From the IMG/VR virus record IMGVR_UViG_3300036770_007547, positions 158,776 through 222,775 of that record: a stretch of DNA of 64,000 nucleotides, one strand, 5' to 3'. Position 1 is the first letter of the stretch, and every line of letters starts with the position of its first letter. The position numbers and the translations under genes were made by a program. The notes below the pieces were generated by a model. It worked only from the letters and a program-made list of their open reading frames with translations. It did not search any database and had not been told where the DNA came from. This document shows, one piece after another, positions 27,910-54,742 of the stretch.

Positions 27910-27924
27910 TTAGGACAAAGTAGC

Positions 27925-28908: not shown

Positions 28909-28913
28909 TTGGC

Positions 28914-28943
28914 TTGACAATCTGCCCCGGCATCTAGTACAAT
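28914..28943 (+). promoter_or_regulatory. Sigma70-like promoter at the head of the glycan/radical SAM cluster
   Basis: TTGACA (28914-28919), 18-nt spacer, TACAAT (28938-28943); ATG at 28950. Confidence 0.75.
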
Positions 28944-28949
28944 AACTAG

Positions 28950-29255
28950 ATGAATCCCGAAGACATCGTTGCTTTATCCCGCAGCAGATTCGATCATGAA
29001 TCTGCTCGCCGGGTGCTCAAAGAAAAATATCAAGCCAAACTTGTGTTTGCACATGCCGGCGGTATGTGGCAAGCTGGTCCAGAATTGCAGACCACTTTGC
29101 TGACTTGTCCAGAACCCGAAGCCGTGATACTAGATCTCTATGAAACACCGGTAAAAATCAATGTCCAGGATCTTATGACCAAAAGCCAAGAGCGTTGGCA
29201 AGAACAAATGACGGCTTGGCTGATCGAACATCAAAATCTGAGTCGGCAACGATGA
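28950..29255 (+). CDS. Hypothetical protein
   Basis: 101-aa ORF after the promoter; stop overlaps the next ATG (ATGA). Confidence 0.75.
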   Translation: MNPEDIVALSRSRFDHESARRVLKEKYQAKLVFAHAGGMWQAGPELQTTLLTCPEPEAVILDLYETPVKINVQDLMTKSQERWQEQMTAWLIEHQNLSRQR

Positions 29256-30004
29256 ATCGTGGAGTAGTTATTTTCGCCACAGATTCAGACTCGATCAAAT
29301 ACACAGCCATGGCCCAGTGGAGCGCTGATCGTATACAACGACATCTCGGATTGCCAGTGACTGTGATCAATGGGCAAGACCTGTCACCGCAACAGCGTTG
29401 GTTTGACGATTTTGGCAGCAACGTGGATTGGTACAATTCGGATCGCAGCGATGCTTGGAATCTAAGTCCCTATGACGAGACCTTGGTGTTGGATGCCGAC
29501 TACGTGGTGTCCAGCGATTGTTTGATCAAGCTGTTTGAAACAAAGCAAGATTTTTTGGCCATGGGCGAGGCCTACGACGTGACCGGTCTACGAGAAAACA
29601 TCAACCAATTTGGCAGATACAACATGCCCATGGCCTGGGCCACAGTGATGTTTTTCCGTCGCAGTCGGCTGGCTCGGGCAGTGTTTGAAATGATGCAAAT
29701 GATACGCGAACACTGGCATCACTATCGCGATCTTTATGGGTTTCCGGGATCTTTGTTCCGCAACGACTACGCACTCAGTATCGCGCTCAATACCTTGCAC
29801 GGACATCAAGGGCGTTGGCCAGCCATACCTTGGAAGATGGCCAGCCTTGATCCCGAACACAAATTGACACAGCTCGATCAAGATCGTTTCGAAGTCATCT
29901 ATTCAAAACCCGATGGACGACGCAGCCGAATCATGATAGATGGACAGGATTTCCATGCCATGTGTAAACGCGACCTTGGAGCCATAGTCGATGCTGCGAT
30001 GTGA
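29252..30004 (+). CDS. GT-A-like glycosyltransferase
   Basis: Likely start ATG 29252 (MNRGVVIFA). ETLVLDADY DxD motif; FRNDYALSIAL. Confidence 0.6.
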   Translation: MNRGVVIFATDSDSIKYTAMAQWSADRIQRHLGLPVTVINGQDLSPQQRWFDDFGSNVDWYNSDRSDAWNLSPYDETLVLDADYVVSSDCLIKLFETKQDFLAMGEAYDVTGLRENINQFGRYNMPMAWATVMFFRRSRLARAVFEMMQMIREHWHHYRDLYGFPGSLFRNDYALSIALNTLHGHQGRWPAIPWKMASLDPEHKLTQLDQDRFEVIYSKPDGRRSRIMIDGQDFHAMCKRDLGAIVDAAM

Positions 30005-30719
30005 ACGTGGGTACCTCATTCCAGCCATTGGTCAGGAATACCTGATTTGCGCACAACGGTTGAAGCAGAGCCTGCTGGATTGGAATCCCGGAGCAGATGT
30101 CACTATAATCACTGCCGAAGATCTGCCACACGGTGACCAGGGTGGTCAAGCCAATGATTGGCAGATGTTCTATGTTTCGCCTTACCGCCAGACCATAAAA
30201 CTCGAATCCGACATGTTGTGCACCAGCCAATTCGATCACTGGTGGTCACTGTTTGAAAACCTAGATGTGGTCATCAGCCAAGGCTGCCGCGATTGGAAAG
30301 GGCAACACAGCCCGGTGCGACGATACCGAAGATTCTTGGACGCCAACCATCTACCAGATGTCTACAATGCCATCACCTATTGGCGTCTCAGCGACACTGC
30401 CCGCGATTTTTTCGATCTCACCCGAGTGATCTGGCAGAACTGGAAATCGATTTCTTCCAATTTGAAATTCGCTGACCAAGAACCCAGCACCGACTTTGTT
30501 TATGCTGTGGCAGCCGAGACCATGGGAAGACAGCGTGTGACTTTGCCAGTGGGCATCGGCCCCACGATCACGCACATGAAACCAGTGATAGGTGGTTCTT
30601 TGACCGGGCCTTGGACACGAGAAATGATGTGGGAAAAAGTCGATGGTGAGTTGCGTATAAACACCATAAGCCAACACGGCATGTTCCATTATCAGATCAA
30701 GGACTGGGATCCATCATGA
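29991..30719 (+). CDS. GT-A-like glycosyltransferase paralogue
   Basis: SPYRQTIKLESDML resembles SPYDETLVLDADY of the preceding ORF; DVYNAITYW, STDFVYAVAA. Confidence 0.55.
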   Translation: MLRCERGYLIPAIGQEYLICAQRLKQSLLDWNPGADVTIITAEDLPHGDQGGQANDWQMFYVSPYRQTIKLESDMLCTSQFDHWWSLFENLDVVISQGCRDWKGQHSPVRRYRRFLDANHLPDVYNAITYWRLSDTARDFFDLTRVIWQNWKSISSNLKFADQEPSTDFVYAVAAETMGRQRVTLPVGIGPTITHMKPVIGGSLTGPWTREMMWEKVDGELRINTISQHGMFHYQIKDWDPS

Positions 30720-31060
30720 AACAATACCCTGCATTGATCCAGGCCATGCAGCAACGCATGCCTTTGCCTGCACCGCCGCAGTATCGTCTCTATTACGACG
30801 ATCTAGGAAGGCCGATAACTTACACCACCGAAGATTTGCCCGGTAATTATGTGGTGCTCACTGTGGACGAGTATGCGTTTGCCAGCCCACATGTGCGTGT
30901 GAAAAACGGCAAGTTGATCACAGTGTCGCGGCGCCCGGCCGAGAAACTGATATCAGTGTCGGATCACGGACAAAGATGTCATCCCTGTGATGTCACAGTG
31001 ATAGTGTCTGAATCAATGCCAGCAAGATTATGGAGATTACAAGATGAATCCACGATATGA
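30716..31060 (+). CDS. Hypothetical protein
   Basis: 114-aa ORF overlapping its neighbours in the operon. Confidence 0.7.
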   Translation: MKQYPALIQAMQQRMPLPAPPQYRLYYDDLGRPITYTTEDLPGNYVVLTVDEYAFASPHVRVKNGKLITVSRRPAEKLISVSDHGQRCHPCDVTVIVSESMPARLWRLQDESTI

Positions 31061-31973
31061 CATCGCGGACCTAGATTGCATATTCCTCACCTACGACGAA
31101 CCACAACGCGAAGAATTTTGGGTGAAAATCAAAAACATGATCCCTTGGGCTCAACGAGTGGATGGTGTCAAGGGATCGGATGCTGCACACAAGGCCGCGG
31201 CCGATGCCAGCCAAACCGAACGGTTCGTCCTCATCGACGGGGACAACATACCCGACATGGAGTTTTTTAATTTGATACTAGAGTTCCCCACATTGGAACA
31301 TCAACAAGCAGTGTATCGATGGCGGGCCAGGAATCACATCAATGGATTGATGTACGGCAACGGGGGCATCAGTTCATGGACACGCGAATTCGCATGGAAC
31401 ATGCGCACACATGAAAACACCGACGGTCGAGAAGAAACACAGGTGGAATTTTGTTTCGATCCCCTTTACTGGTCCATGCATGATTGTTATTCGACCACAT
31501 ACCCCAACGGCAGTGCTTTCCAGGCCTGGCGTGCGGGGTTCCGAGAAGGTGTCAAGATGTGCTTGGATCAAGGACGCCGACCTACAGTCGCAGAATTCCG
31601 CGAACGAGTACACAGTCGAAATCTCGACAATCTCACTGTATGGCACAATGTGGGCGACGATGTCGAACATGGTATCTGGGCCATCATGGGCGCCAGGATG
31701 GGAACTTATCTGACCATGTTGGATGATTGGGACTATCGAGAGGTACAGAGCTTTGACGCTCTAGCCAAACTTTGGGAAGTGGAACAATACGTGGATCCCT
31801 ACGAAGCCGCCGATACCTATGCCAAAGGTTTGCGAACACGGTTGGATCTTCCCACGTGCAGACTTGACCCCGAACAAAGCCGATTCTTCAAGCATCATTA
31901 TCGCAGCAATTGGTCGAACCTGGGTGTGATGGTGCGCGAGATCGATGTCATACGTCGCCAGGAAGGATGGTAA
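31044..31973 (+). CDS. Glycosyltransferase-like protein (GT-A, DxD)
   Basis: CIFLTYDEP, RVDGVKGSDAAHKAAA, FVLIDGDN, NGLMYGNGG, AWRAGFREGVK. Confidence 0.55.
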   Translation: MNPRYDIADLDCIFLTYDEPQREEFWVKIKNMIPWAQRVDGVKGSDAAHKAAADASQTERFVLIDGDNIPDMEFFNLILEFPTLEHQQAVYRWRARNHINGLMYGNGGISSWTREFAWNMRTHENTDGREETQVEFCFDPLYWSMHDCYSTTYPNGSAFQAWRAGFREGVKMCLDQGRRPTVAEFRERVHSRNLDNLTVWHNVGDDVEHGIWAIMGARMGTYLTMLDDWDYREVQSFDALAKLWEVEQYVDPYEAADTYAKGLRTRLDLPTCRLDPEQSRFFKHHYRSNWSNLGVMVREIDVIRRQEGW

Positions 31974-33005
31974 TTGAACATAATCGGTCTCGATGATGGC
32001 TATCGATTCAAACTCGAAAGCATGCCACGTGGCGCACACAAGTCCCAACCCATAACACATCGTTGCAATCGACCCAGTCGTGTGGTCACTGTGGACTTCA
32101 ACGGCAACTGTCTGGTGTGTAGCTGTGATGGATGGTTACCGGTACCAGTGGGGCAGGTACAAGATTTCAGCACACTGGATTCGGTATGGGCTTCGTCGCG
32201 GGCACAGATGTTGCAACAAGACATAGACCAAGGAAGGTTCACCTGGTGCGCTGTGGAACACTGTGGCATCAAGCACAACGACATTGACCATGGCATGTAC
32301 GAACTCGCCATCAACATCGATGAAAGCTGCAACCTTTCCTGCGCCAGCTGCCGACGTGACACCATCATGCATACCACCGGTGCTGTGGTCGAGAAAAAAC
32401 AACAAGACATGCAGCGCATACTGGAATGGTTGGAGGATTTTGATCGACCTTTGCATGTGGTGACTTCGGGCAACGGAGATCCGTTGGCCAGCGTGGTCAT
32501 GCGTAAATTCCTGCAGAATTATCAACCTCGCCCGGCACAGTTTTGGACCATGTTCACCAACGGACTGTTGATCAAAAAACAGCTGGAACGACTGCCTGTG
32601 CTGGCAGCTATAAAAAATTTCCGCATCAGCGTGGATGCAGCCCGTGCCGACACATATGCTCGCGTGCGTCGCGGTGGACATTGGCCCACGCTCATGGAAA
32701 ACTTTGAATTCCTGCAAAATTTTGACGGCGACTTTGAAGTCACTGTGAATTTTTGTGTGCAACAAGCCAACTATCAAGAGATACCCGAGTTCATCGCACT
32801 GTGCCAAACGCATGGATTCAAGCCACACATACACGAACTCGATGACTGGGGCACCTGGGATCGATTCCACGAACACAATGTGTTGGACCTCCGTCATCCC
32901 GACCATGTGGCTTGTCGGAACATCGTGGAATCCAGCCTGGGTAAAAATCACAAACGTCGATGGTTTTTCAGCACAAGACTCTTGGAGCTATTGTCACTGA
33001 CATGA
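31974..33005 (+). CDS. Radical SAM protein with N-terminal twitch-like Cys domain
   Basis: CNLSCASC (CxxxCxxC); N-terminal C...GNCLVCSC...C...C; GNGDP in place of GGEP; FRISVDAA. Confidence 0.85.
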   Translation: MNIIGLDDGYRFKLESMPRGAHKSQPITHRCNRPSRVVTVDFNGNCLVCSCDGWLPVPVGQVQDFSTLDSVWASSRAQMLQQDIDQGRFTWCAVEHCGIKHNDIDHGMYELAINIDESCNLSCASCRRDTIMHTTGAVVEKKQQDMQRILEWLEDFDRPLHVVTSGNGDPLASVVMRKFLQNYQPRPAQFWTMFTNGLLIKKQLERLPVLAAIKNFRISVDAARADTYARVRRGGHWPTLMENFEFLQNFDGDFEVTVNFCVQQANYQEIPEFIALCQTHGFKPHIHELDDWGTWDRFHEHNVLDLRHPDHVACRNIVESSLGKNHKRRWFFSTRLLELLSLT

Positions 33006-34393
33006 CCAACAAAAGCCATTTCATGAACGCGGCCGAAGAGATGCAGAAGAAACTGGCGGCTGTGAGTCCCAGTCTTTGCCTGGCCAAATGGAAACAGACC
33101 AGCCTGCATCTCACCACAGGACACACCAACTCGTGCTATCATCCACCCCTGCATCGCATACCCATCGAGCCCTTGGCCCAGGATCCCGGTGCCTTGCACA
33201 ACACAGATCACAAGCGACAGCAGCGAGTGATGATGCTGAAGGGAGAACGTCCTGCAGAATGCCAGTACTGCTGGAACATGGAAGACCTGGGCCATCTCAG
33301 TGATCGTCATTATCGCAGTGGCGAACCCTGGGCAGCCATAGACTTTGATCGCATCGCCAACAGCCAAGGAGACGAACTTGATGTTATCCCCAGTTATGTT
33401 GAAGTCAATTTTAGCCATGCTTGCAATCTTAAATGCAGTTATTGTAGTCCGCAATTCTCATCGACTTGGGGCGACGAAGTGGCCAGACTGGGCGGCTATC
33501 CTACTAGCACTCCTCATAATGCACCTGAGTATTTTCATGGTGATCGCCGACCTATTCCGTTACGGGAGCATAATCCCTATGTAGAGGCCTTCTGGCAGTG
33601 GTGGCCAACACTGTATCCCCGCCTGCAACATTTCCGCATGACCGGAGGCGAACCGCTCATGGACCGGAACACCTACCGAGTGTTTGACTATGTGTTGGCC
33701 ATGCCCAAGCCTGACCTGCATCTCAATGTCACGTCGAATTTCAGCGTGGAACCAGGCCTGTGGGTCAAATATTTAGATTATGTTGAGCGCCTGTGTGCCA
33801 CCAACATCGAACATTTCATGCAGTACGTGAGCCTGGATTCGGGCATACGAGAACATGCTGAATACATACGTCATGGACTCAGCATGGGTAGGATTCATAC
33901 TTACGTGGATGAATACCTAGAACGTGTGCCGGGACGTAACAGTCTCACTTTCATCATCACCATGAACAATCTATCGGTGTTGGGACTGCAACGTCTGTTA
34001 GAATATATACTGGAGTTGAGACAGACACACAGCAAGACCTATCAAAAGATCTGGTTTGATACTCCCGTATTGCGTCAACCCGCATGGCAGAGCCTGCAGA
34101 TCTTGCCCGAGAGTTATGCTGCCACCCTGGAGCGCACTGCTGACTGGATGGAGCTGAACATGGAAACGCCGGATGACCCATTCCATGGATTCAAAGACTT
34201 CGAAGTGCAGCGCCTGCGCCGCGACATAGCCTGGATGCGCGAAGGTCAGCGACTGGACCATGACCAGGCCCAAGCCGACTTTTACAGATTCTTTGCCGAA
34301 CACGACCGCCGCCGCGGCACTGATTTTTTACAGACCTTTCCCGAAATGCGCGAGTGGTGGAAACACTGTGAACGTCTCTCCAATCAAACATAG
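33002..34393 (+). CDS. N-terminal twitch-domain radical SAM protein
   Basis: Likely start ATG 33002. CLAKW...SCYHP...CQYCW; CNLKCSYC; MTGGEPL. Confidence 0.9.
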   Translation: MTNKSHFMNAAEEMQKKLAAVSPSLCLAKWKQTSLHLTTGHTNSCYHPPLHRIPIEPLAQDPGALHNTDHKRQQRVMMLKGERPAECQYCWNMEDLGHLSDRHYRSGEPWAAIDFDRIANSQGDELDVIPSYVEVNFSHACNLKCSYCSPQFSSTWGDEVARLGGYPTSTPHNAPEYFHGDRRPIPLREHNPYVEAFWQWWPTLYPRLQHFRMTGGEPLMDRNTYRVFDYVLAMPKPDLHLNVTSNFSVEPGLWVKYLDYVERLCATNIEHFMQYVSLDSGIREHAEYIRHGLSMGRIHTYVDEYLERVPGRNSLTFIITMNNLSVLGLQRLLEYILELRQTHSKTYQKIWFDTPVLRQPAWQSLQILPESYAATLERTADWMELNMETPDDPFHGFKDFEVQRLRRDIAWMREGQRLDHDQAQADFYRFFAEHDRRRGTDFLQTFPEMREWWKHCERLSNQT

Positions 34394-35510
34394 ACTTTTT
34401 CTAGATGAGTTCAGCAACGTACAAAGCTGTCTACGGCCCTGGGCCCACCACACTTTCCATGACCTAGCTGCCAGCTATCACGGACCTGGGTGCTATGTAC
34501 TGAGTCGTCAACAGTTGGTGCAGAACATCGAACTGGTACGCAAGTTATGCGAGCTCGATGATCATGTCATGGTGTTGGAAAATTCTTCGGAAGGATCGGA
34601 GACACTCACTGGCCATTTCCGACAAATGGGCATCGAAGAATTGGTACGATCTCGACGCTTGCTGGTGATCGCGGGCGGAGACATGGATCACACATATCCA
34701 CATCTGCTTTATCAGCATTTTTTGTGTTGTGTGCTTGATTATCCGGAAAATCGTCTGGCGCAACAACGCACACAAGACATATTTGACCACAAGTCCCGGC
34801 CCTACGACTTCATGTTCCTGAACGGTCGTGGCCGCGGGCATCGACGCTATCTATGGCATCGATTCCAACAGTTGGGTCTGCTGGATCGTGCCTTGTGGAC
34901 CATGCTGGATGGCCGCCCCATATACCCCACTGGACTGACTTTGCACCACAGCGGACATGATCTCATGAGCGATGTCATACCCTTGCAGTGGTTGCCGACA
35001 AAGTATGAATATCATGAATTCCGAGACTCGCAAGTGATTCCTGGCCCGCCCAATCGCACCTTTGTCAAGCCCGAACTGTTCAAACACACCTGGGGCGACA
35101 TTTATCTGGAACCACAGGGCTATGTTGACACCTATTTCAGTGTGGTCACCGAAACTGTGTTTGAATCGCAACACAGTTTTTTCACTGAAAAGATAGCCAA
35201 GCCCTTGGCCCAGGGCCATCCCTGGATAGCAGTGGCCAATCCTGGATTCTACCGGGATTTGCGTGCCCTGGGATTCAGAACTTTTTCACATGTGATAGAC
35301 GAAAGTTTTGATGCCATCCAGGATCATCAGACTCGTCTAGAGCGCATAGTTGCCGTGGTGCAAGACATTTGCCGACAGGACCTTTCGGCTTTTGTGGATG
35401 CCTGCCAGGAGGTGTGTAAATACAATCAGCGCCATCTAGCAGCATTTTCACAATCACATCGCCGGAAATTGCCCCGACGATTTTTTGATTTCATAAAAAC
35501 CAATGAATGA
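34368..35510 (+). CDS. GT-B-like (GT10/exostosin-like C-terminus) putative glycosyltransferase
   Basis: Likely GTG start at 34368. YFSVVTET...FFTEKIAKP...PW...LRALGFRTF..VIDESFD motif, shared with two paralogues at 44.6-46.9 kb. Confidence 0.5.
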   Translation: MNVSPIKHRLFLDEFSNVQSCLRPWAHHTFHDLAASYHGPGCYVLSRQQLVQNIELVRKLCELDDHVMVLENSSEGSETLTGHFRQMGIEELVRSRRLLVIAGGDMDHTYPHLLYQHFLCCVLDYPENRLAQQRTQDIFDHKSRPYDFMFLNGRGRGHRRYLWHRFQQLGLLDRALWTMLDGRPIYPTGLTLHHSGHDLMSDVIPLQWLPTKYEYHEFRDSQVIPGPPNRTFVKPELFKHTWGDIYLEPQGYVDTYFSVVTETVFESQHSFFTEKIAKPLAQGHPWIAVANPGFYRDLRALGFRTFSHVIDESFDAIQDHQTRLERIVAVVQDICRQDLSAFVDACQEVCKYNQRHLAAFSQSHRRKLPRRFFDFIKTNE

Positions 35511-42060: not shown

Positions 42061-42158
42061 CATGGTTGAAACGATTGATCGGATGGATCAAACTAGAAAT
42101 ACGTTATCGCAGGAAACTGCGCGAGTTACGCAAACGCGACCCTTTCATTTATAAATGA
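42057..42158 (+). CDS. 33-aa highly basic peptide (MTWLKRLIGWIKLEIRYRRKLRELRKRDPFIYK), not in ORF track
   Basis: ATGA overlap with both neighbours; fills the gap exactly. Confidence 0.7.
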   Translation: MTWLKRLIGWIKLEIRYRRKLRELRKRDPFIYK

Positions 42159-43642: not shown

Positions 43643-44659
43643 ATAGGTTTCCAGTGGCCCACGACGACGTATGTCCTGGGTCACACAAGAAATCCCGCCA
43701 TCCCAAAAGTATCGATGCCGCAAAGGAGCGATTATGGGTTCGATCCTGTGGCGTTGACAGAACTCAAACACTTCTTTGTTGTAGCTGGAAAATATCACAT
43801 GATGCTCGTCGAGCACCAGGCAGTTGACATCAAACACAGTTTCGCTGACAAATCCGGTCCAGTGCGAGAGATACTGATCCACATAAGCAGCAAAGGCCGG
43901 ATCATCGTGGCTGCCTTCCACCCACCATCTTCCATTGAACGAAGACTCTTTGAATTGTCCCACGGCCAAGCTGGCTTCGATGTTGCTGAGTGGTACACGG
44001 CAAACTTCCCAGCCCGGGAACGTGTCTCGATAATTGATGTCAGCATCGTGTTTGCTTGACAATATCACTCCGGGTCGCAATATGGCAAACACAGCATCTC
44101 CGTGACCGTTGGTCTGACAACGGCGCACACGGAACCTTGAATCCAATGCATGCTGTTGTATCCACTCCATCTGCTGACTGGTCATGTATTCGCTGTTGTC
44201 AAACAGCACATCGGTGCCAACTCGAACTATGCAGCTGGCCACAGCGCCCGCCATCACAGCATCACGTGCCTGCAACACCGAGCCCGGTTGTAAACGCTGA
44301 TATTCGGTGATGATTCCGTTGTACTCGTAGTCATCGTTGAATCGCAACAAACGCTCGCCCAGGGTTATCTGTGTGTCTCTGGGGGTTATGGGTGGAGTAG
44401 GTGGACGCATGCCACGCGACAGCATGTCCTGGAAACTGAGAACTCCGGTGGGTTCAGGTCTGCGCACCCGGGCACCGAATCTTTGTATGACTCGAGCCAG
44501 ATTGTCCAGGTCTTCTTCGGTCTCTTCCATGATACGCTGTAGTTGTTTGCGTACCCGGCGGTCCGGTATCGAAGAAAAATGTTTTTTGCTATAGACGCGC
44601 CCCACTATCACTTCTTCCAAGGGCTGCCAACTGGTGTAAGATTGTACGGTCAATTCCAT
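43637..44659 (-). CDS. Amidinotransferase (glycine/inosamine-phosphate amidinotransferase-like)
   Basis: SWQPLEEVIVGR, PRD, HGD, FDVNCL and C-terminal GGISCVTQD (candidate catalytic Cys): pentein fold. Confidence 0.88.
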   Translation of the reverse strand: MELTVQSYTSWQPLEEVIVGRVYSKKHFSSIPDRRVRKQLQRIMEETEEDLDNLARVIQRFGARVRRPEPTGVLSFQDMLSRGMRPPTPPITPRDTQITLGERLLRFNDDYEYNGIITEYQRLQPGSVLQARDAVMAGAVASCIVRVGTDVLFDNSEYMTSQQMEWIQQHALDSRFRVRRCQTNGHGDAVFAILRPGVILSSKHDADINYRDTFPGWEVCRVPLSNIEASLAVGQFKESSFNGRWWVEGSHDDPAFAAYVDQYLSHWTGFVSETVFDVNCLVLDEHHVIFSSYNKEVFEFCQRHRIEPIIAPLRHRYFWDGGISCVTQDIRRRGPLETYL

Positions 44660-45840
44660 GTCAGGCTTTCAAGTAAGCTATTTAAACGCGGAGTGAGATC
44701 TCCGGTGAATAATCTCTGATTGTGTTCGAGATCAGGCCAACAGCGTTGATACCAATCGCGTAGATTTTTTTGTTGCATGATACCTTGTATGGCATCAAAC
44801 ACCTTCTCCCAGCGACGGTTGTTGTCAAGTTCTTGATCGTAGCTGTTGTCGATCACAGAATCAAACGTGCGGTAACCTAGACCTCTCAAGGCAGACAAGG
44901 TACCAGCAGCACCAAATATCACGAAAGGCTGTGCATGCTTGATGGGCTTGAAGGTTTTTTCTGTGACAAAGGCTCCCCGAGATCCGTCTGCGTCAAAGTG
45001 TGTCTCGAGTACGACCTGGAAGTAGCTGTTGGTGTAGTGTTCGCGCACATGGTGTGTGTGATCATTGTGCGCCTGATGATCCAAGGCATCGGCCCGGTAA
45101 GGACCGTTTTCCATGAATAGCTCGAGGCTTTGCTTCAGCCCCGGACGATACCAGAAACGTATGGGGTTGTCGGTAAAAGGTTCGTCTAGGGCCACTTGGG
45201 TGTTGTAGCTCCATATGGCTCGTTGCAACCATCCACGGCGCTGCATTTCGGTCATGGTAGTGGCCCGCCACCATTTGTGTGTGCGTACCAAGCTGGTGAA
45301 CGCATGCGGTCTTTTTCTTTTGTTGTCCGGAGCCACAGCCGGATGTTGTTGATTGCGCAAACGGAACAACAGCTCGTCGTCGGCAAAGTAACGACAGTTT
45401 TGCATGGTACTGGCCTCGGTGTTGGCCGATATCAATATCACACTTTCTGGTGGCAATGAATTGTTGAGGCATTGTTGATCCAGGCTCTGTCTTATACGGC
45501 CGGGATTGTCGCCTTCGCTGTAGAATATCAGTATCTTCACACGACACTGTTGACATAGCTGTTTCACTGCCTGGGGCACGAGATCGAGATGCTGTGTGTC
45601 ATGATCGAAAAATGTGAGAGCTATGGGATAGAACGCCTGATGTCTGACTTGATCATGAGTGATGGCTCTTACTGCTATGCCATGCACACGGCAATATTCA
45701 TAAAACATCACCGGCTCGCTCCAAGGCCAATGCTGGCTGAATTGATGCCACTCGGGTGTGTATGGTCGGGCCTGCCATCGTGCGATGTTTGGTGCTGGCC
45801 TTGCTTGATCCCAGACATGATCAAAAACAAAATCAATCAT
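44650..45840 (-). CDS. GT-B-like (GT10/exostosin-like) putative glycosyltransferase
   Basis: Likely start ATG 45840 (MIDFVFD). YFQVVLET...FVTEKTFKP...PF...LRGLGYRTF..VIDNSYD. Confidence 0.5.
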   Translation of the reverse strand: MIDFVFDHVWDQARPAPNIARWQARPYTPEWHQFSQHWPWSEPVMFYEYCRVHGIAVRAITHDQVRHQAFYPIALTFFDHDTQHLDLVPQAVKQLCQQCRVKILIFYSEGDNPGRIRQSLDQQCLNNSLPPESVILISANTEASTMQNCRYFADDELLFRLRNQQHPAVAPDNKRKRPHAFTSLVRTHKWWRATTMTEMQRRGWLQRAIWSYNTQVALDEPFTDNPIRFWYRPGLKQSLELFMENGPYRADALDHQAHNDHTHHVREHYTNSYFQVVLETHFDADGSRGAFVTEKTFKPIKHAQPFVIFGAAGTLSALRGLGYRTFDSVIDNSYDQELDNNRRWEKVFDAIQGIMQQKNLRDWYQRCWPDLEHNQRLFTGDLTPRLNSLLESLTWN

Positions 45841-46939
45841 TGAAATCTCGTCGCATTTTTTCCAGCATGCATGAAACTTCGTCCCATAACACACGTTCAA
45901 AGCCGCCACCATAAAAATGTCGATGATTGTGTTCGATCACTGGCAAGCAGCGTTGGTACATGTCGTTGAGTTGTTGATGATCCAGGCTGTCCATCCAACA
46001 CAACAGTTGCGATATCTTTGATAACCTCACAGCATCGTCGACTTCGCTGTCATAGCTTTCGTCCCAGACGTCATGAAAGGTGTGGAATCCATATCTGCGA
46101 AGATATTCGAGACTGCCAGCACAGCTTACCATCACAAACGGCATCTTGAGGCAGATGGGTTTGAATGTTTTTTCAGTGAGATGCTGTCGTGTGCCGCTGA
46201 ACACAGTTTCTGTGATCACGTAGGCTAGACTACTCGCAGTCTCGTGGAATTGTGTGAGACAATAGCTTTTCATGGGATGCCCGGTTTCCCCGGAAAAATT
46301 CCAGGGCAGTTGGGCTTGTCGTACCAGCTCACGTGCCTGGTCCCCGCCCAGGGCATGTGCTAGATCCAGCACAGACTGGCCCTCTACGGGACATTGATCC
46401 GGAAAGCTGATACAGGCATTGTGGACGTTGTGTTCCAACAGTTTCAGCAAAAGTCGCACTCGATGTTCGCGGCGTCCCCCGACTATGCGATTGGCACTGA
46501 AAAAACTGTGAGTTATATCCCGCTTGTTGGGGTCGGTGATCAACCATGTGCGGTCGTAGCCACGGAACCAATCCAAAGCAGCCCATCCGTGGAAAAAATA
46601 ATAGTAGTCTTTGAGGCGGTATCTTTCACACAGTTCACGCACATTGTCGCTTTGGTATTCGCTGTGTATCATGGCTCGATGCCTGGGACCTATCCTGTGA
46701 TTGAGATCACGATTGCGGATCTGTAGATCATCAAACAGCGGAGCATGCATGTCCAAATATATTGGCTCTTGATCGTGAAAGTAAGTATAATTTAGTTCAA
46801 AGCCATTGGCTGCGACCTTGACGAGATTTTCGGGTCGTGAGCTACCAAACGGATCGCAATAAAACATGCGTGTGGCGGGAACATGTTTCTGTATATAGGG
46901 CCAGAACAGGTAATGATAGATTTCATCGATCTTGATCAT
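45833..46939 (-). CDS. GT-B-like (GT10/exostosin-like) putative glycosyltransferase
   Basis: AYVITET...HLTEKTFKP...PF...LRRYGFHTF..VWDESYD. Confidence 0.5.
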   Translation of the reverse strand: MIKIDEIYHYLFWPYIQKHVPATRMFYCDPFGSSRPENLVKVAANGFELNYTYFHDQEPIYLDMHAPLFDDLQIRNRDLNHRIGPRHRAMIHSEYQSDNVRELCERYRLKDYYYFFHGWAALDWFRGYDRTWLITDPNKRDITHSFFSANRIVGGRREHRVRLLLKLLEHNVHNACISFPDQCPVEGQSVLDLAHALGGDQARELVRQAQLPWNFSGETGHPMKSYCLTQFHETASSLAYVITETVFSGTRQHLTEKTFKPICLKMPFVMVSCAGSLEYLRRYGFHTFHDVWDESYDSEVDDAVRLSKISQLLCWMDSLDHQQLNDMYQRCLPVIEHNHRHFYGGGFERVLWDEVSCMLEKMRRDFND

Positions 46940-48533
46940 GTTTGACGTTTTTTACATCAGTGAACCCACGGGATTGTTCCCACACGAAAAACCAGCGCGG
47001 GATCTAGAACATGCCAGACAGCAGTCTCGCACCCGATATTTATGGGTGGTCCATGGTGCCAATGATTATAGCACGTTTGACTGGTACTGGGAGCCACCGC
47101 CTGGACAGAAACACCAAGCACATGTGTGGCCCAGTCAACATCAAGCCAATGGAGGCACATGGTTGATACCACGCGAAGGTTATCAAGACATCAATCGCGA
47201 TCATGCAACCATAACACGCTGCAAGTCTGTGCCCAGGCTACACATCAAGCATTCATCCAGTGCCGATGTCGGTGATGTCAACACACGCTATATTGGTTCT
47301 TATCTGGGCACCTTGCGACGAGCCTTGTCTCACGTGACATGGACCTGGTGCTGGGTCACTGCCGATGTGTGTGACTATCAACATTTTGATTTCACTTGGC
47401 ATCCCAGTGAATGGCAAGATCACATGTTGTCTGTGTTTGCCAGTGGTTCTCAAAAGTTCGGAGACACATTCTATGTGCATGTGCCCACGTTCTTGGAAAA
47501 AAGCCAGAACCTAGCTCTGTTGGAGTGGTTCGACACCTTGAATTTCATACAAGATCCCTGTGTTCCTCGACATGCTGTGCCACGCATCAAGTATCACAGC
47601 GATTCCGTGGTACCGGCAGTGCTCGCACATGATTTTTCACAGCCAATCGCGGAATTCTATTGCCAACAACCGGCCACCAAGCTCGTGGATCTCAATCTTT
47701 GGCGCGATGAAACCAAAGCAGTGACTCTGTTGCGCACCGGGGGGACCAGTGTGTTGGTGCCACGTGAAGCCAAAAATCATCTGCGCACACAGATGTATGA
47801 CTATCCTGTGATAGATCGAGGCCAGGACCTAGAACCTTCAGAGGCATTGGACATCGTGTACATCTCCAACGGAGAACCCGACGCTGATCGAAACTGGGCC
47901 AGCCTGATGTTGCGCAAACAAGGACAGCCCAACCGCTTGGTGCGGGTGGATCGAGTGCCAGGTCGTGCTGCTGCCTATCATGCTGCTGCTCGAGCCAGTG
48001 AGACGCCGTGGTTCTTTGCTGTGTTTGCCAAGCTGGATGTGCTGGCCGACTTTGATTGGTCGTGGCAGCCGGATCGCCTGCAACAGCCCAAGCACTATAT
48101 CTTCCATGCACTCAATCCCGTGAACATGCTGGAATACGGGCACCAGGCCATGATCGCCTACAATCGTGATCTAGTGTTGGCCAATCCCGGTCGTGGTCTG
48201 GACTTTACCTTGGATGACGCACACGAAGTGGTGCCCATACTGTCGGGCGTGGCACGCTACAACACCGATGCCTGGACTGCTTGGCGTACTGCTTTCCGAG
48301 AAGTGATCAAACTGCAGGCCAGCCTGCCCGATGTCGAAAACGAATATCGCTTGCGCCAATGGTTGACCAAGGGACAAGGTCCCTATGGCGAATGGTCAGT
48401 GTACGGTGCCGAGGATGGCGTGGCCTACTACCAAGAAGTTGCGGGAGATTTTGATGAACTGCGCAAGAGCTACGAGTGGTCCTGGTTGGCCAGTTACTTG
48501 TTCTTCAAACGTGGGATTTCACCGACTCGGTGA
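46938..48533 (+). CDS. Multi-domain glycosyltransferase-like protein
   Basis: ATG 46938 (MFDVFY). C-terminal domain (DIVYISNGEP...AAYHAAARAS...AWRTAFREVIK) resembles 31044-31973. Confidence 0.5.
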   Translation: MFDVFYISEPTGLFPHEKPARDLEHARQQSRTRYLWVVHGANDYSTFDWYWEPPPGQKHQAHVWPSQHQANGGTWLIPREGYQDINRDHATITRCKSVPRLHIKHSSSADVGDVNTRYIGSYLGTLRRALSHVTWTWCWVTADVCDYQHFDFTWHPSEWQDHMLSVFASGSQKFGDTFYVHVPTFLEKSQNLALLEWFDTLNFIQDPCVPRHAVPRIKYHSDSVVPAVLAHDFSQPIAEFYCQQPATKLVDLNLWRDETKAVTLLRTGGTSVLVPREAKNHLRTQMYDYPVIDRGQDLEPSEALDIVYISNGEPDADRNWASLMLRKQGQPNRLVRVDRVPGRAAAYHAAARASETPWFFAVFAKLDVLADFDWSWQPDRLQQPKHYIFHALNPVNMLEYGHQAMIAYNRDLVLANPGRGLDFTLDDAHEVVPILSGVARYNTDAWTAWRTAFREVIKLQASLPDVENEYRLRQWLTKGQGPYGEWSVYGAEDGVAYYQEVAGDFDELRKSYEWSWLASYLFFKRGISPTR

Positions 48534-49587
48534 TGTATTCGACTTCGAGGTCAGTGAGCTCGGGATAAAAAGGCAAGCTCAATACACGACGGCTCAGCGC
48601 ACTGGCCGAACTCAGGAATCCCGGCCCCGGAAACTGATGGAACTCGGGTATTTCGTGCAACGGAGTACGATAATGCACACGGGCCTCGATGTGGGCCTGC
48701 AAAAGCGATTGCTCCAAGTCATCGCGATGATCCACATCGATCACAAACTTGTGCAAGGCATGTTCGTGTAAATTGTGTTCGGTGATCAAACAGCGCATGG
48801 ATCCTCGGAACTCTTTGATCCAATGTTCGGCGATCTTGGCCCGGCGTTGTTGCCATTGGTCCAGATACCTAGTCTTGACCATGAGATGCGCGGCATCTAT
48901 TTCACTGATGCGACTGTTTGTACCCCAAGTGCGATGACGGTTGTATTTGCCATTGTCGCGCCAAGCCCGTGCATAGTCGGCCAGTCTGGGATCGTTGGTG
49001 ACCACGGCACCACCGTTTCCGTATGCACTGAGATTTTTCATGGGATCAAAACTGATGGCAGCACCAGATCCGATCCTGCCACAATCGTCACTGATCCAAT
49101 GCTGGGCAGCATCTTCTATCACAGCGATGTGAGTGAATTTTTGCCAATCTCGCACCGAACCATGGTGTGTGATTGGATGTCCATAAAGCCCGACCAGACA
49201 CATGGCATTGATGCTGGAACGATCTGGAAGTTTTCTGAGATCCATGATACCGTCTGAATCCACATCGCACAATATCACATCCCAGCCCGCTCGCAGCCAG
49301 GCATTGATGGTGGCCACATATGTCATGGAAGGCACAGCCACCGTGGGTTGGGCGTCGGTTGTTTCGTGTCGCAAGAATTCAGCGATGATTTCCAGGGCTT
49401 GTGTGCCTGAATGACAGGTTATGGCCCATTTGCATCGATTTTTTCGTGCCAGCCAGTGTTCAAACTCTTCGGTCCAGTTTCCACTCATGACCTGCCCAGA
49501 TCTCAACACCTCATCGGTGACATCCAGGATTTCCTGGCGCAAGTTGTTGTACTGTTTCTTGATTCCAGTGAACGGGATTTTGATCAT
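48505..49587 (-). CDS. DegT/DnrJ/EryC1/StrS PLP-dependent sugar aminotransferase
   Basis: CHSGTQAL, IEDAAQ, SFDPMKNLSAYGNGG (PLP lysine), NSRISEIDAA, LSLPFYP. Confidence 0.93.
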   Translation of the reverse strand: MIKIPFTGIKKQYNNLRQEILDVTDEVLRSGQVMSGNWTEEFEHWLARKNRCKWAITCHSGTQALEIIAEFLRHETTDAQPTVAVPSMTYVATINAWLRAGWDVILCDVDSDGIMDLRKLPDRSSINAMCLVGLYGHPITHHGSVRDWQKFTHIAVIEDAAQHWISDDCGRIGSGAAISFDPMKNLSAYGNGGAVVTNDPRLADYARAWRDNGKYNRHRTWGTNSRISEIDAAHLMVKTRYLDQWQQRRAKIAEHWIKEFRGSMRCLITEHNLHEHALHKFVIDVDHRDDLEQSLLQAHIEARVHYRTPLHEIPEFHQFPGPGFLSSASALSRRVLSLPFYPELTDLEVEYITESVKSHV

Positions 49588-49593
49588 GATCGG

Positions 49594-50580
49594 TCACAAT
49601 GCCAGTCGTTGACGCCAGTAATCGCTGTTGATGATCCAGTTGTGATAGATTTGGAATCCTTGGTCAATGTCGACTTTGGGATTGAAATCCAGTAGTTGCT
49701 GTGCTAGAGTGATGTCGAGTCTTCCGCGACTGGGAAAATCCTGATCACGATCGCGCACTTCGATGTCACCACGGCCCACTAGTTTTTGTGCCAGTTGAGC
49801 TGCTTCTAGCAGTGTCCATGCATGACTCTTGGTTATGTTGAAGGTGTGATTGTTGGCTTGATCTCTCAGGCACGCAGCCACGATGCCATCGGCAGCATCA
49901 TCCACGTAGGTAAAATCCAAGCGCTCGTTGGCACCGTTGACGCGTATGGTTTCTCCGCGCATGGCAGTGATCAAGAAACGACTGATCACGCGATCCTCCA
50001 CGTCCAAGGGTCCGTATACTGCACTGGGACGGATCACCACATGCGCCATTCCATACTTGCGGGTGTAATCTCGCACCAACCATTCGCCGGCCAGCTTCAT
50101 GATGCCGTATTGACCTTGTGGACGGCATTCGGCATCTTCGGTCACTGCATCACGGAAGTCGCCATAGACCATGCTGGATGATATGTAAACAAACTTTTTC
50201 ACGCCCGACAGTCTCGCTGCTTCCAAGAGATTCAAAAGACCTTCCATCATGGTACGCGAGCCCAGCGCCGGCGCAGCATTCACCACTTTCTGTCTCGGGA
50301 AACTGGCCATGTGTATCACAGTGTCGGGCTGTTCTTGGCGAAACACATAATCCACATTGTGTGACACAGAGATATCGCCCACATACAATGGTGTATCGGG
50401 TGCGATGCGTTTTTCTCTTTCTTGGAACAGATACTGCATCTCATCTTCGGGTATGATACCGTAGTTGGTTTTGTTGTCCATGACCGTGGTCCAATGTCCC
50501 AGTGCTTGCAGACGATTCACCACATTGTGACCGATGAGACCAAGCCCACCTGTAACTAAGATTTTTCTTGATTGTTCCAT
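49594..50580 (-). CDS. NAD-dependent NDP-sugar epimerase/dehydratase (extended SDR)
   Basis: VTGGLGLIG (GxxGxxG), SSSMVYG, YGIMK (YxxxK), RPSAVYGP, DFTYVDD. Confidence 0.93.
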   Translation of the reverse strand: MEQSRKILVTGGLGLIGHNVVNRLQALGHWTTVMDNKTNYGIIPEDEMQYLFQEREKRIAPDTPLYVGDISVSHNVDYVFRQEQPDTVIHMASFPRQKVVNAAPALGSRTMMEGLLNLLEAARLSGVKKFVYISSSMVYGDFRDAVTEDAECRPQGQYGIMKLAGEWLVRDYTRKYGMAHVVIRPSAVYGPLDVEDRVISRFLITAMRGETIRVNGANERLDFTYVDDAADGIVAACLRDQANNHTFNITKSHAWTLLEAAQLAQKLVGRGDIEVRDRDQDFPSRGRLDITLAQQLLDFNPKVDIDQGFQIYHNWIINSDYWRQRLAL

Positions 50581-52701: not shown

Positions 52702-52721
52702 GCAATTATTTACTACAAAGA

Positions 52722-52751: not shown

Positions 52752-52770
52752 GACAGTGATTCTGGAGAAA

Positions 52771-54740: not shown

Positions 54741-54742
54741 CC

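What the first reader, a model, noticed from the sequence alone, without database searches (positions are those of the whole stretch)
28950..50580. Candidate undescribed system: ~22-kb phage radical-SAM/glycosyltransferase/tailoring cluster next to the tail genes
Seen: right after the tail-fibre genes, about 20 tightly overlapping ORFs encode six N-twitch radical SAMs, four GT-A-like and three GT-B-like proteins, a carbamoyltransferase, an amidinotransferase, a DegT aminotransferase and an NDP-sugar epimerase/dehydratase. A NeuD/PglD-like acyltransferase (56.2 kb), an SGNH-like protein (59.4 kb) and a seventh radical SAM (61.5 kb) lie nearby. Known: SDR plus DegT make NDP-aminosugars; amidino- and carbamoyl-transferases tailor aminocyclitols and aminoglycosides; twitch radical SAMs such as BtrN and MoeK5 oxidise or epimerise sugars. 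Inference: a phage-encoded assembly line for a heavily modified glycan (amino/guanidino/carbamoyl/acetyl, radical-tailored). It could decorate the virion, analogous to giant-virus fibril glycans, or remodel host LPS. DNA hypermodification is the main alternative.
Basis: partly seen in the sequence, partly recalled or inferred. Interest (0 to 1): 0.85.

Follow-up and report, generated by a model that had tools for sequence, protein, structure and literature searches.

The report
Jumbo-phage radical-SAM sugar-tailoring gene cluster
A widespread group of uncultured giant freshwater phages carries, just after its tail-fibre genes, a conserved, separately transcribed block of sugar-transferring and radical-chemistry enzymes that most likely builds a heavily decorated sugar chain whose target is still unknown.

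Summary
Window 28950-50580 carries 20 closely packed genes. Five are N-terminal-twitch radical SAM enzymes that pass the NCBIfam NF033640 cut-off. A sixth radical SAM has the same layout but misses the cut-off. The block also holds a NodU-type carbamoyltransferase, an AGAT/StrB1-type amidinotransferase, a DegT aminotransferase and an SDR epimerase/dehydratase. Three paralogs have a GT-B-like fold resembling giant-virus glycosyltransferases. One protein, plus the C-terminus of another, has a weakly supported GT-A-like fold. Two further "GT-A-like" proteins remain unverified.

This is not a recent capture. The gene order a-GA1-GA2-b-X31-R1-F1-R2-R3-R4-R5-Y40-carbamoyltransferase recurs beside the tail-fibre genes in 65-80 of 80 sampled IMG/VR loci. 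At least 598 viral contigs carry an R2 relative. The cultured Ralstonia phage RsoM2USA has a reduced syntenic version. Tailoring genes vary at fixed insertion points.

The block has its own sigma-70-like promoter ending 5-7 nt before the first ATG, in 51 of 55 relatives.

Bacterial N-twitch enzymes, mostly in Bdellovibrionota and Bacteroidota, sit with NDP-sugar enzymes, glycosyltransferases and carbamoyltransferases.

Best reading: a cytoplasmic pathway for a radically tailored glycan. The acceptor (virion protein, host envelope or DNA) is unresolved. Related tail-fibre-side cassettes have been noted in pelagimyophages. This conserved block and the function of N-twitch enzymes have not been described.

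The parts
28914..28943 (+). Sigma-70-like promoter (TTGACA, 18 nt, TACAAT) ending 6 nt before the ATG of the first gene. This implies a leaderless or near-leaderless transcript.
   Evidence: Best match (11 of 12) in the scan of 25000-44999. 51 of 55 related loci have a -35/-10 pair ending 5-7 nt before that ATG. 46 of 55 have a GC hairpin plus T-tract just upstream.
28950..29255 (+). Gene a, 101 aa, conserved small protein of unknown function.
   Evidence: No Pfam or PHROG hit. Found in 67 of 80 loci at median 57% identity.
29195..30004 (+). GA1, 269 aa. Putative nucleotide-sugar transferase, unverified. The true start is probably near 29249.
   Evidence: No Pfam or PDB hit. Paralog of GA2. 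Found in 69 of 80 loci. At least 3763 homologs, all unnamed. Homolog RsoM2USA_353.
29991..30719 (+). GA2, 242 aa, paralog of GA1.
   Evidence: phrog_1903, unknown function. hhalign 99% to GA1, with LDADY aligned to LEADM. Found in 70 of 80 loci.
30716..31060 (+). Gene b, 114 aa, function unknown.
   Evidence: No hits. Found in 65 of 80 loci.
31044..31973 (+). X31, 309 aa: GT-A-like N-terminal domain with an invariant D65-G-D67, followed by a helical domain. It is the most conserved non-radical-SAM protein of the block.
   Evidence: 71% median identity in 75 of 80 loci. AF2 pLDDT 76. Top Foldseek PDB hits are all GT-A folds: RmlT, PcManGT, GtrB, HddC, STIV A197, with E from 6e-3. Homologs sit beside bacterial N-twitch genes in 9 of 80 loci, and one is fused to a radical SAM.
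31974..33005 (+). rS0, 343 aa: radical SAM with an N-terminal SPASM-like domain. Accessory gene, not a member of NF033640.
   Evidence: Found in only 4 of 80 loci.
32960..34393 (+). R1, N-twitch radical SAM.
   Evidence: NF033640 309 bits. Found in 80 of 80 loci at 67% identity. Homolog RsoM2USA_349.
34260..35510 (+). F1, GT-B-like glycosyltransferase. The first 38 or so residues are probably not translated.
   Evidence: AF2 pLDDT 87, with residues 1-38 below 50. Foldseek results.
35503..36840 (+). R2, N-twitch radical SAM.
   Evidence: NF033640 296 bits. At least 598 viral contigs carry a relative; the best 80 are 64-76% identical. 49% identical to RsoM2USA_202.
36789..38528 (+). R3, N-twitch radical SAM with an N-terminal extension of about 175 aa.
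   Evidence: NF033640 385 bits over residues 176-576. A metagenomic protein fuses a Y40 domain to an R3-like enzyme.
38525..39736 (+). R4, N-twitch radical SAM.
   Evidence: NF033640 332 bits. More than 7500 homologs.
39723..41018 (+). R5, N-twitch radical SAM.
   Evidence: NF033640 288 bits. 71% median identity.
40987..42060 (+). Y40, 357 aa. Orphan family with invariant H118, N150, H154 and K219. Probable partner of the N-twitch enzymes.
   Evidence: No Pfam or PDB match. 648 representative proteins. Fusion protein P0386 joins Y40 to an N-twitch radical SAM.
42155..43642 (+). NodU/Nol-type carbamoyltransferase.
   Evidence: Pfam. 45% identical to RsoM2USA_199 and 52% to marine virus AG-345-D19. 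Lies directly upstream of an N-twitch gene in Halobacteriovorax.
43637..44659 (-). Amidinotransferase of the AGAT/StrB1 type.
   Evidence: Profile against PDB, 2e-20. Found in 32 of 80 loci.
44650..46939 (-). F2 (44650-45912) and F3 (45833-46939), GT-B-like paralogs of F1.
   Evidence: BLASTP 1e-13 to 2e-19 over their C-terminal parts. Placed in alignment A7 with F1.
46932..48533 (+). Z46, 533 aa: an unknown N-terminal part followed by an X31-like C-terminal domain.
   Evidence: BLASTP to X31, 1.4e-5. Recurs after F3 in relatives.
48505..49587 (-). DegT-family sugar aminotransferase. Nearest solved relatives are C3 and scyllo-inositol aminotransferases.
   Evidence: Pfam 211 bits. PDB matches: Gln-scyllo-inositol transaminase 4e-49, then DesV, QdtB and WbpE. 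It follows Z46 in all 5 loci where that stretch is visible.
49594..50580 (-). SDR NDP-sugar epimerase, dehydratase or decarboxylase.
   Evidence: Pfam. PDB matches: UDP-glucose 4-epimerase 8.5e-28, dTDP-glucose 4,6-dehydratase, UXS.
56217..56906 (-). NeuD/PglD-like hexapeptide acyltransferase, a probable satellite of the pathway.
   Evidence: A homolog lies inside the cluster in relative L008.
61471..62358 (+). rS7, a radical SAM without a twitch domain, a probable satellite.
   Evidence: Homologs lie inside the cluster in relatives, for example L009, L015 and L037.

Best explanation
The block is a conserved operon of a large clade of uncultured jumbo myophages. These phages are distant relatives of the Rak2/CBB/PA5oct-type phages and of RsoM2USA. 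The operon has its own promoter. It makes and tailors sugars in the cytoplasm and joins them into a decorated glycan.

Proposed mechanism (inferred, not shown):
- Host NDP-sugars are the starting material.
- The five orthologous N-twitch radical SAM enzymes each remove a hydrogen atom from a particular sugar C-H bond.
- Their single auxiliary Fe-S cluster then takes the electron, as in BtrN. This yields keto-sugars, or epimerised or deoxygenated sugars.
- Y40 and X31 act as partners of these enzymes.
- The DegT enzyme aminates keto positions.
- The amidinotransferase converts amines to guanidino groups.
- The carbamoyltransferase and the acyltransferase cap hydroxyl or amino groups.
- X31 and Z46 (GT-A-like), possibly GA1 and GA2, and F1-F3 (GT-B-like) transfer the sugars.

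The most likely acceptor is a virion protein of the adjacent tail-fibre and baseplate module. This would resemble giant-virus fibril glycans. The acceptor is the least secure step.
For: Shown:
- Enzyme identities.
- N-twitch architecture with four invariant auxiliary Cys, and homology of that domain to the BtrN twitch domain. The radical SAM core is nearest to viperin, MoaA and BlsE, which act on nucleotides or nucleoside-sugars.
- GT-B-like fold of F1, with matches to Mimivirus L138 and a GT10.
- GT-A-like fold of X31.
- Strict synteny next to the tail-fibre genes in 65-80 of 80 loci, with tailoring genes varying at fixed points: FkbM methyltransferase, kinase-like, GDSL-like and halogenase-like genes, extra N-twitch copies and extra F copies.
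- The same order tail fibre-a?-GA1-GA2-b?-X31-R1-X31' occurs in cultured phage RsoM2USA. There an SDR gene lies among genes annotated as structural (PMC8504454).
- Gene fusions Y40+N-twitch and radical SAM+X31.
- Bacterial N-twitch genes lie with FdtA, an NDP-hexose 2,3-dehydratase and an EryCIII-like GT. Others lie with SIS, a cytidylyltransferase, a carbamoyltransferase, GT2 and DegT, or with GT2 pairs. GT1 and GT2 genes recur among their neighbours.
- No cluster protein has a convincing membrane segment.
Against: - No member of NF033640 has a known reaction.
- GA1, GA2, Y40, a and b have no fold or family assignment.
- The Foldseek matches to solved GT structures are weak (E 6e-3 to 0.05).
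- The operon has a sigma-70-like promoter, and most relatives have a terminator after the tail-fibre genes. The neighbouring structural genes carry a TAAATA motif instead. The operon may therefore be expressed at a different time from the virion genes.
- Several bacterial N-twitch+X31 modules lack classical glycosyltransferases.
- Nothing links the products to any virion protein.
Confidence: 0.45

Rival explanations
1. The pathway remodels the host envelope. The soluble transferases and tailoring enzymes act on host undecaprenyl-linked O-units, lipid A-core or capsule precursors at the cytoplasmic face of the membrane. Host flippases then export the altered glycan. This would block superinfection or retain progeny.
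For: This is the standard reading of glycosyltransferase and LPS-type genes in the tail-fibre-side hypervariable region of pelagi- and cyanomyophages (PMC7029224). A sigma-70-like promoter fits expression before the late genes. The variable tailoring content fits surface diversification.
Against: The block holds no initiating phosphoglycosyltransferase, flippase, polymerase, ligase or any membrane protein. The backbone is a conserved core of the clade, with radical SAMs 57-71% identical. That is more than expected for an optional host-conversion island. The phages appear lytic, so the benefit would be short-lived.
Confidence: 0.2
2. The pathway hypermodifies DNA. Sugars or tailored groups are attached to phage DNA bases to evade restriction and other defences.
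For: Phages are known to glycosylate DNA, and the genes for it are expressed early (own knowledge, T-even phages). The sigma-70-like promoter fits early expression. The radical SAM core is nearest to viperin, MoaA and BlsE, which act on nucleotides or nucleoside-sugars. The variable tailoring fits an arms race.
Against: The window holds no base hydroxymethylase, TET/JBP, DNA kinase or pyrophosphorylase. The thymidylate synthase present is ThyX. The F1 fold search of viral structures returns giant-virus glycan transferases. No T-even DNA glucosyltransferase appears in the top 50. The block lies in the tail-fibre module rather than a replication module, also in RsoM2USA. Only 64 kb of the 223 kb genome was seen.
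Confidence: 0.15
3. The pathway makes a diffusible small molecule, such as an aminocyclitol-, aminoglycoside- or nucleoside-like compound. The compound is made during infection and acts on the host or on competitors.
For: A twitch radical SAM, a DegT aminotransferase, an amidinotransferase and a carbamoyltransferase together follow the logic of aminocyclitol pathways. The nearest solved relative of the DegT enzyme is a scyllo-inositol transaminase. In Poseidonocella the N-twitch genes lie in a cluster with a PKS and deoxysugar enzymes. S-SCSM2R authors proposed 'antibiotic synthesis genes' (PMC12801897).
Against: There is no inositol or 2-deoxy-scyllo-inosose synthase and no exporter. At least five, and possibly seven, transferase-like proteins suggest an oligomer rather than a pseudodisaccharide. 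The fixed position by the tail-fibre genes would be unexplained.
Confidence: 0.12
4. The N-twitch radical SAMs modify a protein or peptide, for example by cross-links or epimerisation in virion proteins or in the small proteins a and b. The transferases would play a minor part.
For: Most characterised SPASM and twitch enzymes act on peptides (own knowledge). AnSME, SkfB and other peptide maturases appear among the PDB matches. Small conserved ORFs accompany the enzymes.
Against: No RRE/PqqD-like domain, leader-type precursor, protease or exporter is present. Proteins a and b look like ordinary folded proteins. Sugar enzymes recur as neighbours in both bacteria and phages.
Confidence: 0.08

Closest known systems
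Host-recognition (hypervariable) cluster of pelagimyophages and cyanomyophages (PMC7029224)
   Same: It lies beside the tail-fibre genes. It holds many glycosyltransferases and LPS-type sugar genes, with radical SAM cassettes that come and go. Its function is untested.
   Different: Here a 13-gene backbone with five orthologous N-twitch radical SAMs is strictly conserved and syntenic across a jumbo-phage clade. Only defined insertion points vary. The block also has its own conserved promoter.
Giant-virus virion glycan clusters (Mimivirus fibril glycosylation genes including L136, L138, R141 and L142; chlorovirus capsid glycans). Recalled from own knowledge.
   Same: A virus-encoded sugar-nucleotide dehydratase or epimerase, an aminotransferase, an acetyltransferase and several cytoplasmic glycosyltransferases. 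The F1 fold matches Mimivirus L138 (3e-4) and a Mimivirus GT10.
   Different: Giant-virus clusters are not known to contain radical SAM enzymes, a carbamoyltransferase or an amidinotransferase. Attachment of a glycan to the virion has not been shown here.
BtrN and aminoglycoside/aminocyclitol tailoring (BtrN, BtrS, StrB1). Recalled from own knowledge, apart from the PDB matches.
   Same: A single-auxiliary-cluster twitch domain homologous to that of BtrN. A DegT-family aminotransferase nearest to a scyllo-inositol transaminase. A StrB1/AGAT-type amidinotransferase.
   Different: The twitch domain is N-terminal rather than C-terminal, and the core is closer to viperin. No cyclitol synthase is present. 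There are five paralogs plus many transferases.
Mycobacteriophage virion glycosylation by phage glycosyltransferases encoded near structural genes. Recalled from own knowledge.
   Same: Phage glycosyltransferases lie next to structural genes and act in the cytoplasm on virion proteins.
   Different: Those systems have one to a few transferases and no radical tailoring. No homology was tested here.
T-even phage DNA glucosylation
   Same: Soluble phage glycosyltransferases that use host NDP-sugars and are expressed from early promoters.
   Different: The window holds no hydroxymethylase. The F1 fold search does not return T-even DNA glucosyltransferases.

Membership tests
NCBIfam NF033640 N_Twi_rSAM (twitch domain-containing radical SAM protein) | Whole-protein HMM score at or above the curated cut-off of 170 bits | tested here: met
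   R1 309, R2 296, R3 385, R4 332 and R5 288 bits. Not met by 31974-33005 (46 bits) or 61471-62358 (21 bits).
NCBIfam NF033640 N_Twi_rSAM | CX3CX2C radical SAM motif preceded by an N-terminal Cys-rich twitch (partial SPASM) domain | tested here: met
   Invariant C122, C126 and C129, plus C8, C27, C73 and C76 in R4 numbering. Pfam places SPASM before Radical_SAM. Residues 6-79 match BtrN residues 186-261 at 2.5e-5.
NCBIfam NF033640 N_Twi_rSAM | A defined catalytic reaction | not testable with these tools
   No paper in the library holds the family name. No characterised member was found.
NodU/CmcH-type O-carbamoyltransferase | Carbam_trans_N and Carbam_trans_C domains above the Pfam cut-offs | tested here: met
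   127 and 168 bits. The NodU equivalog model scores 136 bits against a cut-off of 1000, so this is not a NodU ortholog.
Amidinotransferase (AGAT/StrB1, guanidino-group-modifying superfamily) | Homology over the whole fold, with the C-terminal catalytic Cys and the His/Asp block conserved | tested here: met
   The profile matches AGAT at 2e-20 in three stretches, and also StrB1, SxtG and HsvA. Invariant C325 and the H186-x-D188 block align with AGAT. Pfam itself gave no hit.
DegT/DnrJ/EryC1 sugar aminotransferase | Pfam PF01041 above its cut-off, and similarity to solved sugar aminotransferases | tested here: met
   211 bits. 4e-49 to a Gln-scyllo-inositol transaminase, then DesV, QdtB and WbpE.
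GT-A fold glycosyltransferase | Nucleotide-binding Rossmann-like domain with a DxD motif, seen as fold similarity to solved GT-A enzymes | tested here: inconclusive
   X31: the top 12 PDB hits are GT-A enzymes, but with E 6e-3 to 0.04 and TM about 0.3. D65-G-D67 is invariant. GA1 and GA2: no model made, no family hit.
GT-B fold glycosyltransferase (GT10-like) | Two Rossmann-like domains, seen as fold similarity to solved or annotated GT-B enzymes | tested here: inconclusive
   Confident model (pLDDT 87). PDB hits are almost all GT-B but weak (0.03 to 1). BFVD hits: Indivirus glycosyltransferase 1e-4, Mimivirus L138 3e-4, Mimivirus GT10 7.5e-3. No Pfam GT hit for any of 24 family members.
Phage DNA glycosylation system (T-even type) | A base hydroxymethylase together with DNA-specific glucosyltransferases | tested here: not met
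   No hydroxymethylase in the window; ThyX is present instead. No T-even transferase among the F1 fold matches. The other 159 kb of the genome was not seen.
Virus-encoded virion glycan cluster (giant-virus type) | The glycan is attached to virion proteins | not testable with these tools
   Only position next to the tail-fibre genes and enzyme resemblance are available.
Lipid-linked O-antigen or capsule locus | An initiating phosphoglycosyltransferase, with a flippase and polymerase or an ABC exporter | tested here: not met
   No such Pfam hits and no convincing membrane segments in 28950-50580.

The most novel reading that the evidence does not exclude
N-twitch radical SAMs, the GT-A-like X31 and the orphan Y40 form an uncharacterised radical glycan-tailoring machine. 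It is shared by an abundant clade of jumbo phages and by predatory and other bacteria, especially Bdellovibrionota. The phages use five dedicated paralogs of the radical SAM to build a hyper-modified glycan (amino, guanidino, carbamoyl, acyl) on their tail or baseplate proteins. This would be the first radical-SAM-dependent virion glycosylation and would reveal new sugar radical chemistry.
Probability: 0.3. Interest if true: 0.85.

Novelty: new variant of a known kind. Interest (0 to 1): 0.68.

Why it matters
- **Scale.** At least 598 IMG/VR contigs carry a relative of R2, and thousands of homologs exist for every core protein. No core protein has a known function.
- **Chemistry.** Five orthologous copies of an uncharacterised radical SAM family, kept in fixed order, point to new carbohydrate radical chemistry.
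- **Biology.** They also point to a phage trait important enough to be core to the clade.
- **Testability.** Cultured phage RsoM2USA carries a reduced syntenic version. The long-open question of what the tail-fibre-side 'LPS-like' genes of aquatic myophages do can therefore be tested directly.

Tried and rejected
Searches that found nothing useful:
- Megablast of the block against GenBank phages: no match.
- Profile searches of PDB sequences with GA1, GA2, X31, Y40 and the F family: nothing significant.
- Pfam scans of every member of the F, GA1 and Y40 alignments: nothing.
The single-protein scan found nothing. A six-sequence alignment worked.
- Homolog search with a Vibrio phage K566 N-twitch protein: only 2 hits.
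- Homolog search with GA1: only unnamed orthologs.
- IMG/VR scan with the DegT protein: only the window's own contig, because the method needs exact 8-residue words. DegT conservation therefore rests on the 5 loci where that stretch was within the fetched flank.
- Exact-sequence look-up of the Reichenbachiella N-twitch protein: failed.
- tblastn of F1 against GenBank phages: no match.

Readings considered and rejected:
- X31 is not related to GA1 or Y40.
- A recent bacterial capture: rejected on flat G+C and clade-wide synteny.
- A lipid-linked O-antigen or capsule locus: rejected for lack of initiating, flipping and polymerising proteins.
- Simple membership of the late tail operon: rejected on the conserved terminator and promoter.

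Full report
**What is there.**
The window is the last 64 kb of a 222,775-bp metagenomic phage contig, JGI 3300036770. Positions 17-28908 encode baseplate hub and wedge proteins, a 4986-aa virion structural protein and tail-fibre-like proteins.

From 28950 to 43642, fourteen genes run on the + strand with short gaps or overlaps. Three genes follow on the - strand (43637-46939), one on the + strand (46932-48533) and two on the - strand (48505-50580). G+C is flat at 0.48-0.53 throughout.

**Identities.**
- *N-twitch radical SAMs.* Five proteins (R1-R5) pass the curated cut-off of NCBIfam NF033640 with 288-385 bits against 170. Pfam places SPASM ahead of Radical_SAM in them.
- An alignment with phage homologs keeps four N-terminal Cys and the CX3CX2C motif invariant.
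- A profile of the family matches the C-terminal twitch domain of BtrN with its N-terminal 75 residues (2.5e-5). Its core matches viperin best (2e-11), then AnSME, SkfB, BlsE and MoaA.
- *Sixth radical SAM.* 31974-33005 has the same domain order but scores only 46 bits and is rare in relatives.
- *Carbamoyltransferase, DegT and SDR.* These calls are solid. The DegT enzyme is nearest to a glutamine-scyllo-inositol transaminase and to the C3 aminotransferases DesV, QdtB and WbpE. The SDR lies between UDP-glucose 4-epimerases, dTDP-glucose 4,6-dehydratases and UDP-glucuronate decarboxylases.
- *Amidinotransferase.* 43637-44659 has no Pfam hit. A 15-sequence profile matches AGAT, StrB1, SxtG and HsvA at 2e-20 to 3e-15, with the catalytic Cys aligned.
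- *F family.* F1, F2 and F3 are paralogs. The F1 model is confident (pLDDT 87). Its matches to solved structures are nearly all GT-B enzymes, but weak. In the viral structure library it matches giant-virus glycosyltransferases, including Mimivirus L138 and a GT10.
- *X31 and Z46.* X31 (pLDDT 76) gives only GT-A-fold proteins as top hits, weakly, and has an invariant D-G-D. The C-terminus of Z46 resembles X31.
- *GA1 and GA2.* They are paralogs of each other and otherwise unassigned.
- *Y40.* It belongs to an orphan family with 648 representative sequences.
- *Membrane segments.* None of the 20 proteins has a convincing one.

**Conservation.**
- At least 598 IMG/VR contigs, up to 345 kb long, encode a relative of R2. 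The best 80 are 64-76% identical.
- In those 80 loci, each covering 10 kb either side, the order is t1-TF-t3-a-GA1-GA2-b-X31-[variable]-R1-F1-R2-R3-R4-[F]-R5-Y40-carbamoyltransferase-[variable]-AmT-F2-F3-Z46. Core genes are present in 65-80 loci.
- Counts for genes beyond about 46.8 kb are limited by the fetched flank. DegT follows Z46 in all five loci where that stretch is visible.
- The variable slots hold extra N-twitch and F copies. They also hold an FkbM methyltransferase, an APS-kinase-like protein, a GDSL-like protein, a tryptophan-halogenase-like protein, SDRs, rS7 and a NeuD-like acyltransferase.
- Among GenBank phages, only four records hold N-twitch genes: RsoM2USA, Vibrio phages K566 and K567, and marine virus AG-345-D19. 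In AG-345-D19 they sit beside a carbamoyltransferase and an amidinotransferase.
- RsoM2USA, a cultured Ralstonia jumbo phage, has a reduced syntenic version. Its order is giant structural protein ORF361, SDR ORF358, tail-fibre-like ORF355, ORF354, GA1, GA2, ORF351, X31, R1 and a second X31. R2 and the carbamoyltransferase lie elsewhere in that genome. All of these genes are annotated as hypothetical. ORF356 and ORF361 were found in virions by mass spectrometry (PMC8504454).

**Transcription.**
- The 42-nt gap before gene a holds the best sigma-70-type match of the region. It reads TTGACA, 18 nt, TACAAT and ends 6 nt before the ATG.
- In 51 of 55 relatives a -35/-10 pair ends 5-7 nt before that ATG. 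In 46 of 55 a GC hairpin with a T-tract precedes it.
- Neighbouring genes, including baseplate and tail-fibre genes, instead carry TAAATA 8-60 nt upstream.
- My inference is that the block is its own transcription unit, probably leaderless, and may be expressed on a different schedule from the virion genes.

**Bacterial relatives.**
- A genome scan found at least 458 N-twitch loci. They are mainly in Bdellovibrionota and Bacteroidota, often with 2-6 copies per 20 kb.
- Recurrent neighbours are other radical SAMs, B12-radical SAMs, PhyH dioxygenases, GT1/GT4, GT2 and ABC ATPases.
- *Poseidonocella:* two N-twitch genes lie with FdtA, an NDP-hexose 2,3-dehydratase, an EryCIII-like GT and a PKS.
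- *Halobacteriovorax:* a carbamoyltransferase lies directly upstream of the N-twitch gene. SIS, cytidylyltransferase, GT2 and DegT genes are nearby.
- *A Bdellovibrionota genome:* GT2 pairs and about eight radical SAMs.
- *Other loci:* some hold only N-twitch, X31-like and further radical SAM genes.
- *Fusions:* Y40 is fused to an R3-like N-twitch enzyme in one metagenomic protein. A radical SAM is fused to an X31-like domain in another.

**Interpretation.**
The identifiable enzymes, the two fold assignments, the bacterial neighbourhoods and the fusions all point to sugar or nucleotide-sugar chemistry. Several transferases would then assemble the product.

Two steps are inference only. The first is that N-twitch enzymes oxidise, epimerise or deoxygenate sugar positions, with their single auxiliary cluster acting as in BtrN. 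The second is the acceptor.

Three observations favour a virion protein as the acceptor:
- the block keeps a fixed place beside the tail-fibre module, also in RsoM2USA;
- no lipid-carrier machinery is present;
- F1 resembles the transferases of giant-virus fibril glycan clusters.

The separate sigma-70-like promoter keeps host-envelope remodelling and DNA modification open. Only 64 kb of the 223 kb genome was seen.

I put about 0.65 on 'sugar or glycan tailoring pathway'. I put about 0.35 on 'the virion is the acceptor'.

**Comparison with what is known.**
- Tail-fibre-side clusters of glycosyltransferases with radical SAM cassettes were described in pelagimyophages and read as host O-chain modification (PMC7029224).
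- A cyanophage with DegT-like, amidinotransferase and radical SAM genes was read as 'antibiotic synthesis' (PMC12801897).
- Neither study tested function. Neither reports this conserved backbone, the N-twitch family, the Y40 and X31 partners or the promoter architecture.
- No paper in the library names N_Twi_rSAM.
- I therefore rate this as a new variant of a known kind, with high practical interest because a cultured phage offers a direct test.

Noticed in passing
window 56914-57306 (- strand): Phage-encoded tmRNA of the betaproteobacterial type (RF01850, 116 bits; ARAGORN flags it as permuted) with tag peptide ANDEVFALAA. It hints at a betaproteobacterial host. This fits RsoM2USA, a Ralstonia phage, being the nearest cultured relative.
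   Followed up: partly
window 61369-63799 (- strand): Array of seven tRNA genes (Leu, Pro, Thr, Met, Arg, Lys, Ile). The ORF listed at 60850-61458 overlaps tRNA-Leu, so its upstream part is probably not coding.
   Followed up: partly
window 10413-25373 (+ strand): Single 4986-aa ORF between the baseplate wedge and tail-fibre genes. Its first 2000 residues are about 30% identical to 'virion structural proteins' of PA5oct-type Pseudomonas jumbo phages. Other parts match RsoM2USA ORF361, which was detected in virions.
   Followed up: partly
window 28860-28952 and the same spot in L005-L084: Conserved hairpin terminator, then a -35/-10 promoter, then an ATG only 5-7 nt after the -10 element. This implies a leaderless mRNA for the first gene of the cluster. 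The window itself keeps the promoter but lacks the hairpin.
   Followed up: yes
window 6467, 6875, 26148, 26173, 44684(-), 54474(-), 56918(-), 58349(-), 61460: The hexamer TAAATA sits 8-60 nt upstream of many gene starts, in about half of its 20 occurrences in the window. It looks like a T4-late-type phage promoter. It is absent in front of the cluster's first gene.
   Followed up: partly
L085, L086 (Haliscomenobacter MAG), L087 (Legionellales MAG): Contigs of 43-183 kb binned into bacterial MAGs carry the whole phage cluster at 42-65% identity. They are probably mis-binned phage contigs, or weak host hints.
   Followed up: no
L018:19808-21055 and relatives; L049:20019-20804; L025:19061-19897: Relatives insert a tryptophan-halogenase-like flavoenzyme (306 bits), an FkbM methyltransferase and an APS-kinase-like P-loop protein just after the carbamoyltransferase.
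   Followed up: partly
L109, L121, L133, L102 and other bacterial loci: N-twitch radical SAM genes are strongly expanded in Bdellovibrionota and some Bacteroidota, with up to six copies in 20 kb, often alongside other radical SAM families. The overlap with predatory bacteria is unexplained.
   Followed up: partly
window 50804-60868: Auxiliary genes typical of aquatic phages lie here: ThyX, a DUF2201/VWA protein with a MoxR-type AAA ATPase, PstS with a signal peptide, and a fatty-acid desaturase.
   Followed up: no
window 38525-39736: The public gene call for R4 (384 aa) starts 19 codons later than the ORF used here. That call would remove the invariant first Cys of the twitch domain, so the longer start is probably correct.
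   Followed up: partly
L003:19971-26707 and 36283-37338 (Vibrio phage K566): A KVP40-like Vibrio phage carries five N-twitch radical SAM genes in a region that otherwise holds NAD-salvage genes. None of the other core genes of this cluster was detected there.
   Followed up: partly
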